In this document: one piece after another, positions 36,950 to 64,000 of the stretch
Layout: each line of letters begins with the position of its first letter
Numbering within the stretch: position 1 is the first letter of the stretch
Source of the DNA: Malacoraja senta
Lineage: Eukaryota
Reading direction: 5' to 3'
DNA length: 64,000 nt
Assembly: GCA_038087875.1 (NCBI GenBank)
Contig: CM075980.1
Location: 14,198,001 to 14,262,000 of the forward strand
The notes under the pieces: model-generated
What the model saw: only the letters and a program-made list of their open reading frames with translations
Database searches by the model: none
Told to the model about the DNA's origin: nothing
Program-made: the position numbers and the translations under genes

Positions 36950-37630
36950 AATCACACAGCACAGTAGCAGGTTCTTAGGCCCAACTCGCCCATGCCATCC
37001 AAGAAGCCTCATCTACGCTGGTCCCACCTGTTTGGCCCAATATCTATATACTATTAAAGTGTGTGGGTGTGTGTGTTTTTTTTATTTTTCTGTGAAAAAG
37101 TTGCTCCTCAGGTTGCTATTACATTCTTTCCCTCTCACAAATCTATGTCCTCTGTTTCTTGATTTCCCCTATTCTGAGTAAAAGTCTCTGTGCATTCACC
37201 CTATCTATTCTCCTCGTGATTTTATACACCACTATAAGATCACTACTCAGTTTCCTGTGCTCCAAGGAATAAAGTCTTAGCTTGATCAACCTCTCCCTAG
37301 AGGTCAGGCCATCTAGCCCTGGCAGCATCTTGTAAATCTTATGTGCACTCTTTCCAGCTTAATGAAATCCTTACTGCAGCAGGGTAAACAAAACTGAATA
37401 CAGTACTCCAAAACAATCTCACCAACATGTTGTGCAACTATAACATAACATAACTTCCCAACTTCTGTACCCAATACCCTGGCTGTAGAAGGCCAATGTA
37501 CCGAAAGCCTTCTTGACCATTCTACATGTTATGCCACTTGCAGGGAACTCTGTACCTGTACTCCAAGATCCTCCCCTCGCTCGCACTCCCCAGGGCCCTG
37601 GCATTCACTGTGAAGGTGTTGCCCTTGTTT
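36950..37630 (-). mobile_element. CR1 fragment
   Basis: VKKAFGTLAF, LYSLEHRKL. Confidence 0.75.
37043..37078 (+). mobile_element. Short Helitron 5'-end remnant
   Basis: A|TCTATATACTATTAAAGTGTGTG interrupting a CR1 fragment. Confidence 0.4.
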
Positions 37631-38191
37631 AACTCAGTGGGTTAGCATCTGTGCATGGAAATGGACAGATGATGTTCTGGGTCAGGATCTTTTGGCGACC
37701 AAACCTGCTGAGTTCCTACAGCAGTTTGTGTTTTTACTCAAGATTCCAGCATCTGCAGTCTTTTATATCGATATTTAATTATTTTTTAATGTATTCTTGT
37801 TTAGTTGACAGCAATGCGATCTTTAGATTGTGAATTCGAACCTGTGTAATAGTGCAGTGAAGGTTGGCACATTGACACTACATTGCTGAGGGTGGTGTTA
37901 AAGCATTTGTCTGGTTGTTTCATTGACTTGCATGGTTATGAAAGATTCCATGGAACTACATGTAAAAAAACAAGGAGTTTTGCAGGTGTTCTGCCCAAAA
38001 TTCTCTAATCAGTTTTACTTGTTTAGTGTATTGATGATGTGGAATACTACCTTGCCTGTGAATGAGCAAAAGTCACTGGAATAGTAATTATTTTTTTAGG
38101 ATGCTGTGTGGTGACTTACTTTGCTATATATCATTTGGCTATAATGAGCCAAATAAATTAACTAATGTGATCAAAAATATGTCTGAAATAG

Positions 38192-38311: not shown

Positions 38312-39012
38312 GTAAAGTAAATTTGCTGACTGGTATGATGTCTGAATGTTTTGCCTGGACCACATTGAGCACTGTCAATATGTCGGAGCAGCCATTTTCA
38401 AGATACACTTGTATAATCCCATAAACTTTCAGAATCATTAAGCATTGTTGTTGGTAAGAATGGTAATGCATCAGCAACTCCATATTCAACTCAACTGTCT
38501 TAAATCCCACCAGTCAGTTACAGTGCTTGCATATTTTGGATGACTCGAGAGCACAGCCCTGAAAGTTAAAGAAAGCAGAACTAGCTTCTATGCACTCTTG
38601 TAACAATGTTTGCATTTGGGTTCCAGAGAGCTTGGTACACAGTCTTTAGGTATCTGTATTATATGTTAACTCAAACTAAAATGCCAGGGGCAAAAAGCTT
38701 GTAGATGATTCAAAAACTGGACGAATGTTTGGCAGTGCCAAAGAGTCATAAAGTGTGGAAACAGGCCCTTCGGCATAACTTTCCAATGCCGACCAATAAG
38801 CCCAATCTACACTAGTCCCACTTGCCTGCATTTGTTCATATCCCCCTAAACCTCTTATCCATGTACTTGTCCAAATGATTTTTAAATGTTGTGATAGTAT
38901 CTGCCTCAACTACCTCTTCTGGCAGCTCCTTCCATGTACCTACCACCCGTTGTGTAAAAAAAAAGTTGCCCCTTGGGTTCCTATTGAATCTTTACCCCTC
39001 ACCATAAATCTA

Positions 39013-40037
39013 CAGTACATTCAGAAAGCATTCAGACTCCTTCACTTTTTTCCACATTTTGTTACGTTACAGCTTTATTCTAAAATGGATTAAATTCATT
39101 TTTTTAATCATCAATCTATACACAATACCCCATAATTATAAAGCGAAAACATTAAAATTAAATAACTTAAATATCACATTTACATAAGTATTCAGATCCT
39201 TTACTCAGTACTTTGTTGAGGCACATTTGGCAGCGATTACAGCTTTAAGTCTTCTTGGATATCACGCAACAAGCTTGGCACACCTGTATTTGGGTAATTT
39301 CTCCCGTGTACTCTCAAGCTCTGTCAGGTTGGATGGGGAGCGTCGTTGCACAACTATTTTCAGGTCCCTCCAGAGATATTGGATCGGGTTCAAGTCCGGG
39401 CTCTGGCTGGGCCACTCAAGGACATTCACAGACTTGTCACAAAGCCACTCCTGCGATGTCTTGGCTGTGTGCTTAGGGTCGTTGTCCTGTTGGAAGGTGA
39501 ACCTCTGCCCCGGTCTGAGGTCCTGAACGCTCTGGAGCAGGTTTTCATCAAGGATTTCTCTGTACTTTGCTCCGTTCATCTTTCCCTTGATCCTGACTAG
39601 CCTCCCAGTTCCTGCCACTGAAAGACATCCCCACAGCACGATGCTGCCACCACCATGCTTCGCAATAGGTATGGTATTGGCCAGGTGATGAGCAGTGCCG
39701 GGTTTCCTCCAGATGTGATACTTGGTATTCAGGCCAAAGAGTTCAACCTTGGTTTCATCAGACCAGAGAATCTTGTTTAGATGCCTTTTGGAAAACTCCA
39801 AGCGTGCTGTCATGTACCTTTTACTGAGGAGTGGCTTCCGTCTGGCCACTCTACCATAAAGGCCTGATTGGTGGAGTGTTGCAGATATAGTTGTCCTTCT
39901 GGAAGTTTCTCTCATCTCCACAGAGAAACTCTGGAGCTCTGTCAGAGTGACCATCGGGTTCTTGGTCACCTACCTGACCAAAGCCTTTCTCCCCCGATTG
40001 CTCAGTTTCGCCGGGTGGCCAGCTCTATGAAGAGTCC
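39013..40037 (-). mobile_element. Truncated Tc1 transposon (second family)
   Basis: TA|CAGT end; ORF 39262-39969 with WSDETK, KHGGGS, QDNDPKH and SPDLNPI; other end missing. Confidence 0.9.
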
Positions 40038-40039
40038 CT

Positions 40040-40245
40040 CTCTAGATGCGCCTGAGGGTTGGGGGCTATGCGTGAGTGGATAGGGCAAGGATGGGGTAAA
40101 AGGAGCGAATAATATTAATATAATATCAGGGGGGGGGGGGTTAGTGTGTGTGGGGGGGGTGGTTAGTGTGTGTGTGATGCCGCAGGCCCCCCCCCCCCCC
40201 GCATCCGGGCGTTGAGGGGACGGGACCCAACGGGTCCCACTTGGT
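40040..40245 (+). mobile_element. Helitron 3' fragment
   Basis: Similar to 42410-42640; gggaccc-aac-gggtccc hairpin; terminal CTAG degenerate. Confidence 0.65.
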
Positions 40246-40251
40246 TTATCT

Positions 40252-42640
40252 TCTATCTATCTATCTATATACTTTTAAAACTCTGTGGCTGTCGTCCGTC
40301 CGTGCGGCTGTACGTCCAACGTTCTGCTTGCCGCGCGGCCTTTGACACCGCCCCGCGCCCACACAGCGCGCGGAAAGGCCCATATTTTTGACCATTTCCA
40401 AACAGATTACATTTATCTTTACAAAAAGCCACTCCTGATTAAATTCTGTCCTGTTTATGTACACGTTTTTTTAATAAAATCCATCCCCCCCCCAACCCCA
40501 ATGTGATTTTCTCCAATTGTCTCCGATTTTCTCCGAAAATGACGCCATCTTTTCCCCCCCGATTTTTTCCAAAAACGACGCCATCTTTTTTTCGCCGATT
40601 TTCACCCAGGGGTCTGAAGCACGTTCGGGAACAACACCCCGGGGTGTCATCCATCCCCCCACCAACCCCAATTTGATTTTCTCCCATTTTCTCAAAAAAC
40701 GACGCCATCTTTTTTTCGCCGATTTTCTCCGATTTTTCCCGAAAACGACGCCATCTTTTTTCCCCCGATTTTCACCCAGGGGTCTGAAGCACGTTTGGGA
40801 ACAACACCCCGGGGTGTCAAGCACTTTCGGGGACCAGACCCAACGGGTCTGCACTTGGTCTAGTATACTTTTAAAACTCTGTGGCTGTCGTCCGTCCGTG
40901 CGGCTGTACGTCCAACGTTCTGCTTGCCGCGCGGCCTTTGACACCGCCCCGAGCCCACACGGCTCGCGGAAAGGCCCATATTTTTGACCATTTCCAAAGA
41001 GATTACATTTATCTTTACAAAAAGCCACTCCTGATTAAATTCTGTCCTGTTTATGTACACGTTTTTTTAATAAAATCCATCCCCCCCCAACCCCAATGTG
41101 ATTTTCGCCGATTTTCTCCGAAAACCACGCCATATTTTTTTCCCCGATTTTTTCCAAAAACGACGCCATCTTTTTTTCGCCGATTTTCACCCAGGGGTCT
41201 GAAGCACGTTCGGGAACAAAACCCCGGGGTGTCATCCATCCTCCCACCAACCCCAATTTGATTTTCTCCCATTTTCTCAAAAAACGACGCCATCTTTTTT
41301 TCGCAGATTTTCTCCGATTTTTCCCGAAAACGACGCCATCTTTTTCCCCCCGATTTTCACCCAGGGGTCTGAAGCACGTTCGGGAAAAACACACAGGGGT
41401 GTCAAGCACTTTCGGGGACCAGACCCAACGGTTCTGCACTTGGTCTAGTATACTTTTAAAACTCTCTGGCTGTCGTCCGTCCGTGCGGCTGTACGTCCAA
41501 CGTTCTGCTTGCCGCGCGGCCTTTGACACCGCCCCGCGCCTACACAGCGCGCGGAAAGGCCCATATTTTTGACCATTTCCAAAGAGATTACATTTATCTT
41601 TACAAAAAGCCACTCCTGATTAAATTCTGTCCTGTTTATGTACACGTTTTTTAATAAAATCCATCCCCCCCCCCAACCCCAATGTGATTTTCTCCGATTG
41701 TCTCCGATTTTCTCCGAAAACGACGCCATCTTTTTCCCCCCGATTTTTTCCAAAAACGACGCCATCTTTTTTTCACCGATTTTCACCCAGGGGTCTGAAG
41801 CACGTTCGGGAACAACACCCCGGGGTGTCATCCATCCCCCCACCAACCCCAATTTGATTTTCTCCCATTTTCTCAAAAAACGACGCCATCTTTTTTTCGC
41901 CGATTTTCTCTGATTTTCCCGAAAACGACGCCATCTTTTTCCCCCCGATTTTCACCCAGGGGTCTGAAGCACGTTCGGGAAAAACACCCAGGGGTGTCAA
42001 GCACTTTCGGGGACCAGACCCAACGGGTCTGCACTTGGTCTAGTTAACTATTAAAAGTCTGATCTTGGATGTGTGTGTGTTATCACATCTTCGTGAAAAA
42101 AAGATGACAAAACTTTGAATTTGAGCTGTCGGTCCTCGGGTCAGGTCGTGTCCTCGGGTGGGGTCCTCAGGTCGGATCCACTTTCTCCCCCTCGGCCCCG
42201 CCCCCTCTCTCTCTCTCTTCCCCTCTCTTCCCCTTTTTTTCCCTTTTCCCCTCTCTCTCCCTCTCTGTCCTTCTCTCTCTCTCGCTCTCTCTGCCCCCCT
42301 CTCTCTCTCCCTCTGCCCCTCTCTCTTTCTCTCTCTCTCTCTCCCTCTCCCTCTCACTGCCCCTCTCTTTCTCTGTCCATCTCTCTCTCTCTACCCCCTC
42401 CCTCTCCAGCCACGCCTGCGAGTTGGGGGCTATGTATGAGTGGATAGGGAGGGGGATGGGGTAAAAGGAACAAATTAATAATATTAATATAATCTCAAGG
42501 GGGGTGGTTAGTGTGTGTGTGTGGGGGGGTGGTTTGTGTGTGTGTGTGGGGTGCTTAGTGTGTGACTCCGCAGGCTGCACCCCCCCCCCGCGTAACCGCG
42601 CGTTGAGGGGACTGGACCCAACGGGTCTCACTTGGTCTAG
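40252..42640 (+). mobile_element. Cluster of four non-autonomous Helitrons: three ~590-bp copies ending 40863, 41448 and 42043, plus one related element ending 42640
   Basis: 5' TC start; each unit ends in a GC hairpin followed by cacttggtCTAG|T; no TSD. Confidence 0.8.
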
Positions 42641-42659
42641 TAATACTGTAAATGTGTCC

Positions 42660-61800: not shown

Positions 61801-63390
61801 CTAGTCTAAGTGGGACCCGTTGGGTCCCAGCATCACACGGGAGGGCTGGTCCCCAACGCAATATTCCACCTCTCCACCAATTCCAATATTGCTCGCCAGT
61901 GGGGGGAGGGGGGGCTTTCTGTTGCGCTAGTACGGGTGTTGCGGGCCGAAGGTACTGGTTTCCAGAGGGCTAGTATAGACATTGTGGGCCGAATGGATTC
62001 TTGGGCTGGCAGCCAACTGTTACAATGATTTTAAAAGCCAAGCCAAGGCAAACAGTTTGGCTGCAGCCACCTGACAACCAAAATTCACTTTGTGAACACA
62101 AACTTTTTCAAAGGCGAGGCAAACAATTTGGCTGCAGCCACCTGACAACCAAAACTAATTTTGTGAACACAAACTTTTTAAAAGGCGAGGCAAACAATTT
62201 GGCTGCAGCCACCTGACAACCAAAACTCATTTTGTGAACACAAACTTTTTAAAAGGCGAGGCAAACAATTTGGCTGCAGCCACCTGACAACCAAAATTCA
62301 TTTTGTGAACACAAACTTTTTAAAAGGCGAGGCAAACAATTTGGCTGCAGCCACCTGACAACCAAAATTCATTTTGTGAACACAAACTTTTTAAAAGGCG
62401 AGGCAAACAATTTGGCTGCAGCCACCTGACAACCAAAATTCATTTTGTGAACACAAACTTTTTAAAAGGCGAGGCAAACAATTTGGCTGCAGCCACCTGA
62501 CAACCAAAATTCATTTTGTGAACACAAACTTTTTAAAAGGCGAGGCAAACAATTTGGCTGCAGCCACCTGACAACCAAAATTTATTTTGTGAACACAAAC
62601 TTTTTAAAAAGGCGAGGCAAACAATTGGGCAGCAGCCACCTGACAACCAACATTTATTTTGTGAACACTAACTTTTTAAAAAGGCGAGGCAAACAATTGG
62701 ACAGCAGCCACCTGACAACCAAAATTCATTTTGTGAACACAAACTTTTTTAAAAGGCGAGGCAAACAATTGGGCAGCAGCCACCCGACAACCAAAATTCA
62801 TTTTGTGAACACAAACTTTTTTAAAAGGCGAGGCAAACAATTGGGCAGCAGCCACCCGACAATCAAAATTCATTTTGTGAAAACAAACTTTTTAAAAAGG
62901 CGAGGCAAACAATTGGGCAGCAGCCACCTGACAACCAAAATTCATTTTGTGAACACAAATTTAAAAAAAGGTGAGGCAAATAATTGGGCAGTAGCCGCCT
63001 GACAACCAAAATTCATTTTGTGAACACAAACATTTAAAAAAGGCGAGGCAAACAATTGGGCAGCAGCCACTTTACAGCCGCATCGAGGGGACTCACCGTG
63101 GAGTAGACGTGCATTCAGTGTTATTCGCAGCTCTGCCAGACCCAGGAAGCGTGACCCTCTCGCTTCCTGGGTCTGGCAGAGACTGAGTGAGGGACTACAC
63201 TTCCGGGTTTTATAGTCCCTTCCCCCCCTCTCTGATTTTTCATCGATGGGAAAAATCCTCCGGTGCCGGAAGGCGGAGGGGGGCTCTGAGCGAGGTGGCC
63301 AAAAATGACGGCCGTAAGTGGCGGCGTTCTCTCGGAAATCGCAGCACAGTGGGCCAAAAACAGTCAAGATCAGACTTTTAATAATATAGA
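61801..63390 (-). mobile_element. Non-autonomous Helitron carrying a 71-72 bp minisatellite, inserted in a CR1 fragment
   Basis: Minus strand A|TCTATATTATTAAAAGTCTG ... tgggaccc-aac-gggtccca hairpin ... CTAG|T; CR1 resumes across the site without a TSD. Confidence 0.85.
62050..63070. repeat. Minisatellite, 71-72 bp unit, 14 full copies plus a partial
   Basis: Unit starts at 62050, 62121, 62192, 62263, 62334, 62405, 62476, 62547, 62619, 62691, 62763, 62835, 62907, 62978, 63050. Confidence 0.95.
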
Positions 63391-63824: not shown

Positions 63825-64000
63825 TCTCTATACCTATAAAAGTCTCATCTTGTATGTATGTGTGTGTGCGTGTATGCGTGTCTTTCTACCTTCGTCAAAA
63901 CACTACGCGCTAGTTGAAAATTTTACAGTTTATAACTCGCATTAACCTGGTCGACGCAATAAACAGGTTCCCTTCACATTTCATCCTAAATTTTAAAAGT
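63825..64000 (+). mobile_element. 5' end of another Helitron-family copy, running off the window
   Basis: A|TCTCTATACCTATAAAAGTCTCATCTTG(tg)n resembles the starts at 42044 and 63390. Confidence 0.6.

What the first reader, a model, noticed from the sequence alone, without database searches (positions are those of the whole stretch)
40252..42640. Stacked Helitrons with a built-in tally: four TCTA copies match four CTAG ends
Seen: four Helitron-type 3' ends (hairpin plus CTAG at 40863, 41448, 42043, 42640). Units 2-4 start without the family's leading TCTA (CTAG|TATAC..., CTAG|TTAACTATT...), while exactly four TCTA copies sit at 40252-40267. The solo copy at 63390 begins TCTATATT. Known: Helitrons insert between A and T without a TSD. 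Inference: each new copy inserted at TCTA^T in the previous copy's 5' terminus, leaving one TCTA upstream per event. The array would then be a self-targeting nest and the (TCTA)n run a count of insertions. Units 1 and 3 share variants and a 10-bp segment missing from unit 2, and unit 4 is a different subfamily, which argues against simple tandem duplication or one rolling-circle concatemer (that should give CTAG|TCTA junctions). Caveat: the outermost TCTA is preceded by T, not A.
Basis: partly seen in the sequence, partly recalled or inferred. Interest (0 to 1): 0.78.

Follow-up and report, generated by a model that had tools for sequence, protein, structure and literature searches.

The report
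Stacked Helitrons with leftover TCTA heads
Four rolling-circle transposons (Helitrons) lie head-to-tail inside an old Tc1 transposon of a skate-like fish, most likely because each newcomer landed four bases inside the head of the previous one. The four leftover TCTA heads fit that idea, but one locus cannot prove they count the insertions.

Summary

- A fifth, degraded Helitron tail lies directly upstream (40035-40248), with an intact hairpin but no CTAG.
- The 7 bases between that tail and the run (TTTA TCT) are in register with the run. The count is therefore 4 perfect copies plus 1-2 imperfect ones.
- The stack replaces about 570 bp of a Tc1 element.

By homology with the bat Helraiser left end, TCTA belongs to the element. 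Each junction then carries the canonical A|TC and CTAG|T marks of an insertion at TCTA^T. The junction between different subfamilies (unit 3|unit 4) has the same form. Repeated insertion into the resident head is my best explanation (about 0.5).

The argument that units 1 and 3 share variants is weak: a simultaneous origin of the three units is not rejected (p about 0.07-0.1). The genome-wide test of the tally could not be run, because no other copies were reachable.

First-stage readers noted the same idea at several other places in this genome; none of those notes has been checked. Helitron self-insertion and tandem arrays are already published. The fixed TCTA^T site and the run of orphan heads appear to be new details.

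The parts
40035..40248 (+). 5'-truncated Helitron of the unit-4-like subfamily ('Xup'). Only its 3' part remains. The hairpin GGGACCC-AAC-GGGTCCC is intact and the terminus reads GGTTTA instead of GGTCTAG.
   Evidence: 77% identity to unit 4 positions 356-593; alignment runs to 40248; hairpin fold; hairpin core match.
40249..40267 (+). TCT followed by four perfect TCTA copies. Read as orphan 5' heads of the stacked elements; the last copy (40264-40267) is the head of unit 1 itself.
   Evidence: the only tetranucleotide run of 4 or more copies in the window.
40268..40863 (+). Unit 1 (A type, 596 bp), starting TATAC and ending with hairpin plus CTAG.
40864..41448 (+). Unit 2 (A type, 585 bp), headless. 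It has the most private changes, lacks one 10-bp repeat copy, and its hairpin is weakened by a G-to-T change.
41449..42043 (+). Unit 3 (A type, 595 bp), headless; 97.4% identical to unit 1.
42044..42640 (+). Unit 4 (X type, 597 bp), headless. It starts TTAAC and shares only its head motif and tail with units 1-3. It contains a CT-rich tract.
39013..40036 (-). Tc1/mariner element that hosts the stack. This is its 3' two-thirds, with a transposase ORF at 39262-39969. The TA target duplication lies at 39011-39012.
   Evidence: Pfam HTH_Tnp_Tc3_2 and DDE_3; sequence read.
42641..42650 (.). Last 8 bases of the other Tc1 terminal repeat (TAATACTG) plus the second TA of its target duplication. About 570 bp of Tc1 between 40036 and here are missing.
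   Evidence: Alignment with the reverse complement of the Tc1 end at 39013.
61801..63390 (-). Solo reference copy with canonical flanks: A|TCTATATT at the head and CTAG|T at the tail, with no target duplication. It carries a 71-bp minisatellite.
63827..64000 (+). Another head of the unit-4-like subfamily (TCTCTATACC...), preceded by TTTA. The element runs off the end of the window.

Best explanation
This is a stack of non-autonomous, Helibat-like canonical Helitrons built by repeated integration into the left end of the copy already there.

Unit 4 arrived first. Each later unit (3, then 2, then 1) was joined between the A and the T of TCTA^T, four bases inside the resident head. The resident copy kept a headless body behind the newcomer's CTAG, and its orphan TCTA was pushed upstream. 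The TCTA run is therefore mainly transposition-made, not slippage-made.

Shown: the junction anatomy and the homology of the ends.

Inferred:
- The transposase (RepHel), which binds and nicks left ends, chooses the resident left end as its target and cuts at the second A^T rather than at the boundary.
- The three A units arrived close together in time, possibly from one circular donor.
- The upstream fifth tail and the deletion in Tc1 are separate events.
For: 1. Three junctions lack exactly the first four bases of the downstream head, and the junction between different subfamilies (unit 3|unit 4) has the same form.
2. With TCTA restored, the unit 4 head has the same 13-base length before AAAAG as the unit 1 head and the 63827 head.
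3. Every junction reads CTAG|T, and the run reads A|TC three times. These are the canonical insertion marks seen in the solo copy and in de novo Helraiser insertions.
4. The Helraiser left end begins TCCTATATAATAAAAG, and its 5' boundary was mapped by experiment. The skate heads align to it from their TC, so TCTA is part of the element and not flank.
5. The 4-base loss has no flanking microhomology that would produce it by slippage (read directly from the sequence).
6. Each A unit offers 32 AT sites and unit 4 offers 20, yet the same site was used three times. This points to a directed process.
7. The run is the only one of its kind in 64 kb, and the two other heads in the window carry a single TCTA.
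8. Self-insertion into Helitron 5' ends has been proposed for Fusarium and Metarhizium and for maize.
Against: - The run is preceded by TTTA TCT, in register with it, and by a fifth tail that the model does not place. The count is 4 versus 4 only for perfect copies.
- As the run grows, it offers several TCTA^T sites. All three insertions had to use the innermost one.
- There is no age gradient among units: variable-CpG transitions private to units 1, 2 and 3 number 2, 0 and 2.
- A star tree for the three units is not rejected.
- Helraiser showed no local hopping, and its documented internal-AT cut in the left end is on the bottom strand, not the top strand.
- This is a single locus. No other copy of the A type could be retrieved.
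Confidence: 0.5

Rival explanations
1. There were only one or two real insertions at TCTA^T. The A unit was then multiplied, either locally by unequal crossing-over or at integration, as a rolling-circle concatemer copied from a circle whose junction had lost TCTA. The run reached four copies by replication slippage, and the match with four ends is a coincidence.
For: - The two A|A junctions are identical, and the units are exact whole multiples.
- Private substitution counts of 7, 13 and 4 do not reject a simultaneous origin (chi-square p 0.07, exact p 0.095).
- Units 2 and 3 share two states against unit 1 near the 3' end, which is a mosaic pattern expected from recombination.
- About half of Helraiser circles have aberrant junctions.
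- Tandem arrays attributed to rolling-circle replication are reported in plants and bats.
- The extra in-register TTTA TCT shows that the run has mutated like a microsatellite.
Against: - A concatemer from a TCTA-less circle would bring no TCTA at all. One to three copies would then have to grow to four by slippage, which is slow for short tetranucleotide runs (general knowledge).
- Unit 2 sits between the two most similar units. Its private changes are mostly transversions (8 of 13, against 2 of 9 in units 1 and 3; Fisher p 0.10). This hints at a different source copy.
- The model still needs at least one TCTA^T insertion to explain the unit 3|unit 4 junction.
Confidence: 0.3
2. TCTA is not part of the element but its preferred target. 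The family inserts at TCTA^T, and here it landed at the end of a pre-existing (TCTA)n microsatellite. The units are then precise tail-to-head concatemers or boundary insertions.
For: All three heads in the window are preceded by TCTA. Under this parse every junction is precise. The tail itself ends in TCTAG.
Against: - The elements would start with TA or TT, against the conserved 5'-TC of Helitrons.
- The heads align with the Helraiser left end from its mapped TC.
- No TCTA repeats follow the last CTAG.
- The window holds 165 TCTAT sites, and none outside a head lies beside a recognised Helitron end.
Confidence: 0.07
3. The array, or its unit number, is an assembly artefact of a repeated family.
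For: Near-identical 0.6-kb repeats are hard to assemble, and no read data are available.
Against: The units differ at 2.6-5% of positions, with unit-specific indels. The outer junctions join cleanly to a Tc1 element with its TA duplication.
Confidence: 0.05

Closest known systems
Helibat / Helraiser (canonical Helitron1 of vesper bats)
   Same: The left end is TC, then TATAT-rich, then AAAAG. The right end has a hairpin about 11 bases before CTAG. Insertion is between A and T with no duplication. The elements are non-autonomous and carry captured promoter or exon cargo and minisatellites.
   Different: Helraiser showed no local hopping or preference for its own ends in cell culture. The skate heads have TCTA where Helraiser has TCCTA.
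Self-insertion and multiple 5' termini in Fusarium and Metarhizium Helitrons (PMC5148889) and nested maize Helitrons with multiple termini (PMC3288121)
   Same: Both involve a newcomer inserting into or next to the 5' end of a resident copy, which leaves duplicated 5' pieces. For a three-copy tandem in Metarhizium, the authors offer the same two explanations considered here: insertion into the 5' end twice, or rolling-circle replication.
   Different: In those cases the duplicated 5' pieces are tens to about 200 bp long and the insertion sites vary. Here the site is fixed at base 4|5, so the orphans are 4-base units that line up as a microsatellite. In maize, 99% of internal 3' ends have lost CTAG. 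Here the three internal ends keep it and only the upstream fifth tail has lost it.
Rolling-circle tandem Helitron arrays in plant centromeres (Xiong, Dooner and Du 2016, as cited)
   Same: Head-to-tail arrays of truncated Helitrons.
   Different: From my recollection of that abstract, those arrays have many 5' ends with a single 3' end. Here there are several full 3' ends and only one full 5' end. This array is short, lies in a gene-rich region, and mixes two subfamilies.

Membership tests
Canonical Helitron (Helitron1) | 5' terminus TC joined to a host A | tested here: met
   Solo copy GGTA|TCTATATT; head at 63827 TTTA|TCTC; array TTTA|TCT at 40248/40249. Units 2-4 lack their TC because they are headless.
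Canonical Helitron (Helitron1) | 3' terminus CTRR joined to a host T | tested here: met
   CTAG|T at 40863, 41448, 42043, 42640 and in the solo copy at 61801. The upstream fifth tail does not meet this (GGTTTA).
Canonical Helitron (Helitron1) | Short hairpin 10-12 bases before the 3' end | tested here: met
   Stems of 5-8 bp with loop AAC, 11-12 bases from the end. The core GACCCAACGGGTC occurs 6 times against 0.6 expected. Single-hairpin z-scores are weak, as expected for short stems.
Canonical Helitron (Helitron1) | No target-site duplication | tested here: met
   The solo copy's flanks, GTGGTA and TACTGT, share no duplication.
Canonical Helitron (Helitron1) | A RepHel-encoding autonomous partner in the genome | not tested
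I did not look for one in this window.
Precise rolling-circle concatemer | Tail-to-head junction CTAG|TC, as in Helraiser circles | tested here: not met
   The junctions read CTAG|TATAC and CTAG|TTAAC. The precise junction is defined.
Precise rolling-circle concatemer | Units equally diverged from one another (star tree) | tested here: inconclusive
   Private substitutions number 7, 13 and 4; p is 0.07-0.10.
Nested self-insertion stack | Both canonical insertion marks at every event, and the same junction form between different subfamilies | tested here: met
   A|TC three times in the run; CTAG|T at three junctions, including unit 3|unit 4.
Nested self-insertion stack | Number of orphan heads equals number of elements | tested here: inconclusive
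   There are four perfect TCTA copies for four ends. A further in-register TCT and a TTTA lie directly upstream. A sample of one locus cannot settle this.
Nested self-insertion stack | Age gradient, with the oldest unit at the 3' side | tested here: inconclusive
   CpG counts are 40, 39 and 40, and private CpG transitions are 2, 0 and 2.
Slippage-born microsatellite | Repeat number varies among solo copies, individuals or species independently of unit number | not testable with these tools
   No other copies or genomes could be reached.

The most novel reading that the evidence does not exclude
This Helibat-like family uses the left end of resident copies as a preferred integration target and cuts at a fixed internal A^T (TCTA^T). 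Stacks would then grow upstream, and each event would deposit one orphan TCTA. That would make the run a microsatellite born from transposition, and a readable count of events until slippage blurs it. It would also be a natural record showing that the transposase's recognition of its own ends guides target choice.
Probability: 0.3. Interest if true: 0.65.

Novelty: new variant of a known kind. Interest (0 to 1): 0.45.

Why it matters
How Helitrons choose targets, and how their tandem arrays arise (by concatemer replication or by repeated insertion), is still argued from few cases. A family that repeatedly integrates at one fixed base inside its own left end would give a natural, countable signature of the integration step. 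It would also explain how short tetranucleotide microsatellites can be seeded next to transposons. If the pattern does not hold genome-wide, this locus is an ordinary small Helitron cluster.

Tried and rejected
1. Reaching other copies.
- DNA scans with the tail pattern or the hairpin pattern found nothing: metagenome contigs, viral contigs, prokaryote genomes.
- Three protein searches with Helitron-borne ORFs found nothing: a junction-spanning 192-aa ORF, a 73-aa ORF next to the A head, and a 141-aa ORF next to the solo head.

2. Empty-site reconstruction. I looked for paralogues of the flanks of the solo copy and of the 63827 head, to decide whether TCTA is element or target. There are none in the window.

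3. Tree argument. With three units and no outgroup, 'units 1 and 3 share variants' cannot be told apart from 'unit 2 changed more'. The star tree is not rejected.

4. Age gradient from CpG decay. The counts are too small to be informative.

5. Microhomology-mediated deletion of TCTA at a precise junction. Rejected: the direct repeats available there would remove 5 bases, including the G, not the 4 bases observed.

6. The Helraiser in-vitro cut at an internal AT of the left end. It is on the bottom strand, so it gives only general plausibility, not a direct precedent.

7. I found no event history that yields the exact TTTA TCT spacer in fewer than three extra mutations.

Full report
**What is there**

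- Four perfect TCTA copies occupy 40252-40267.
- Three units follow at 40268-40863, 40864-41448 and 41449-42043. Each starts TATAC and ends with a hairpin and CTAG.
- Units 1 and 3 are 97.4% identical. Unit 2 is about 95% identical to each.
- A fourth unit, 42044-42640, shares only its head motif and its last 35 bases or so with the others.
- The internal junctions read CTAG|TATAC twice and CTAG|TTAAC once.
- The run is the only tetranucleotide run of four or more copies in the 64 kb, against about 1e-4 expected from composition.

First, there is a fifth Helitron tail directly upstream of the run. Positions 40035-40248 align at 77% with the 3' part of unit 4, right up to the terminus. The hairpin is intact, but the end reads GGTTTA where the others read GGTCTAG, and the final G is absent.

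Second, the bases between that tail's GG and the run read TTTA TCT, in register with TCTA. The A at 40248 precedes a TC at 40249. The parse that satisfies the A|TC rule therefore gives five head remnants (TCT plus four TCTA) for four downstream ends.

Third, the whole stack sits in a Tc1/mariner element.
- Its 3' two-thirds lie at 39013-40036, with a minus-strand ORF that matches HTH_Tnp_Tc3_2 and DDE_3.
- Only the last 8 bases of its other end remain, at 42641-42648.
- TA target duplications lie on both sides.
- About 570 bp of Tc1 and the 5' part of the upstream Helitron are missing, so a deletion has also occurred here.

**Are these Helitrons?**

Yes, they are canonical ones.
- The solo copy (63390 down to 61801, minus strand) has A|TC at its head and CTAG|T at its tail, with no duplication.
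- All tails carry a 5-8 bp stem with loop AAC, 11-12 bases before the end.
- The hairpin core occurs six times in the window, against 0.6 expected.
- The Helraiser junction oligonucleotide, given in the supplement of PMC5876387, ends in CACTAG and continues TCCTATATAATAAAAG. The skate heads align to that left end from their TC (TC, a TATAT-like stretch, then AAAAG or AAAAC).
- The Helraiser 5' boundary was mapped by experiment. By homology, TCTA therefore belongs to the element and not to the flank.
- With TCTA restored, the head of unit 4 has the same 13 bases before AAAAG as unit 1 and the head at 63827. Units 2, 3 and 4 thus lack exactly four bases.

**What the junctions imply**

Each internal junction is CTAG|T, and the run reads A|TC three times. 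These are the two marks of a canonical insertion between A and T, placed at TCTA^T of the downstream head. Three further points support a directed insertion process.
- The junction between unit 3 and unit 4, which joins different subfamilies, has the same form. Copying of one unit cannot explain that.
- The 4-base loss is not what microhomology at a precise junction would give. That route would remove five bases, including the G.
- Each A unit contains 32 AT sites and unit 4 contains 20, yet the same site was used three times.

I therefore rate repeated integration into the resident left end as the best explanation. The idea that the transposase binds the resident left end and cuts at the second A^T is inference. 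Helraiser does cut an internal AT of its left end in vitro, but on the bottom strand. It also showed no local hopping in cells.

**Tests of rival origins**

The alignment of the three units gives these private changes:
- unit 1: 7 substitutions;
- unit 2: 13 substitutions and 2 indels;
- unit 3: 4 substitutions and 3 single-base indels.

- The 10 bases missing from unit 2 are one copy of a 10-bp tandem repeat.
- Two sites near the 3' end group units 2 and 3 against unit 1, which is a mosaic pattern.
- Unit 2's private changes are mostly transversions (8 of 13, against 2 of 9 in units 1 and 3; Fisher p 0.10). This is a weak hint of a different source copy.
- CpG counts (40, 39, 40) and private CpG transitions (2, 0, 2) show no age gradient.

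A scenario with one or two insertions followed by unit duplication, or a concatemer from a circle with an aberrant junction, remains open. About half of Helraiser circles had aberrant junctions. A TCTA-less concatemer would, however, bring no TCTA copies, so the run would have to grow by slippage.

**The count**

Four perfect copies for four ends is what the stack model predicts if every insertion used the innermost site. That requires the site to be chosen by its distance from the left-end recognition sequence, not by the pentamer alone. The window holds 165 TCTAT sites, and the solo copy inserted at GGTA^T, not TCTA^T. The adjoining TTTA TCT and the fifth tail show that the region has had extra events. 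The equality is suggestive, not proof. The two other heads in the window each carry one TCTA. That is consistent with the model but is a very small sample.

**Reaching other copies**

Nothing was found in any of these searches:
- metagenome contigs;
- viral contigs;
- prokaryote genomes;
- the protein collection, searched with three Helitron-borne ORFs.

The window holds no paralogue of the solo copy's flanks for an empty-site test.

The scan's notebook shows that first-stage readers recorded the same idea at several other places in this genome (s1-172336, s1-191450, s1-184395, s1-175118) and recorded further head-to-tail arrays (s1-178068, s1-181377, s1-207017). None of these was followed up. 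They are leads, not evidence.

**Literature**

- Tandem Helitron arrays are known in plants and bats and are usually credited to rolling-circle replication.
- Self-insertion into the 5' end, leaving multiple 5' termini, has been proposed for Fusarium. For a three-copy tandem in Metarhizium the authors give the same two alternatives considered here.
- Nested maize Helitrons give rise to elements with multiple termini, whose internal 3' ends have nearly always lost CTAG. The upstream fifth tail here looks like such a pseudo-terminus.
- I found no description of a fixed 4-base insertion site inside the left end, or of orphan heads forming a microsatellite. I also found no Helitron work on skates among the papers returned, though that search was not exhaustive.

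**Verdict**

The nested-insertion reading is the best of the available explanations (about 0.5), but it rests on one locus. The 'tally' is unproven and locally imperfect. This is a new variant of a known kind of event, of moderate interest. Its value would rise considerably if the genome-wide census supports it.

Noticed in passing
window 39013-40036 and 42641-42650: A Tc1/mariner element with a 235-aa minus-strand transposase ORF (HTH_Tnp_Tc3_2 plus DDE_3) and TA target duplications. Its 5' third, about 570 bp, has been replaced by the Helitron stack. The Tc1 itself interrupts another interspersed repeat, and a second copy of that repeat lies near 37460-37640.
   Followed up: partly
window 61801-63390 (minus strand): The solo Helitron carries a 71-bp minisatellite of 14.4 copies (62046-63070). 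Near its head (about 63095-63220) it has a TATA-box-like motif, a short exon-like stretch and a GTGAGT donor. This matches the 'TATA-Inr-exon1-donor cassette' noted elsewhere in the genome (s1-140851).
   Followed up: partly
window 63827-64000: A head of a further unit-4-like Helitron, starting TCTCTATACC and preceded by TTTA. It has an extra TC before TCTA and runs off the end of the window.
   Followed up: no
window 40479-40820, and the same part of units 2 and 3: Each A unit holds two internal repeats of about 170 bp. Each repeat has two copies of AACGACGCCATCTT (11 matches in the array, none elsewhere in the window) and a perfect 14-base palindrome, ACACCCCGGGGTGT. The units are CpG-rich (about 40 CpG per 596 bp), which suggests captured promoter-like DNA. 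From memory only, the GCCATCTT core resembles a YY1-type site.
   Followed up: no
window 40864-41448: Seven of unit 2's 13 private substitutions are C-to-A or G-to-T, and none is a CpG transition. In units 1 and 3, private changes are mostly transitions. The cause is unknown.
   Followed up: no
window 40130-40174 and 42499-42551: Both unit-4-type tails carry a duplicated G-run plus GT-repeat block (period 22-25 bases) just upstream of the hairpin. Unit 4 also has a 200-bp CT-rich tract at 42202-42406.
   Followed up: no
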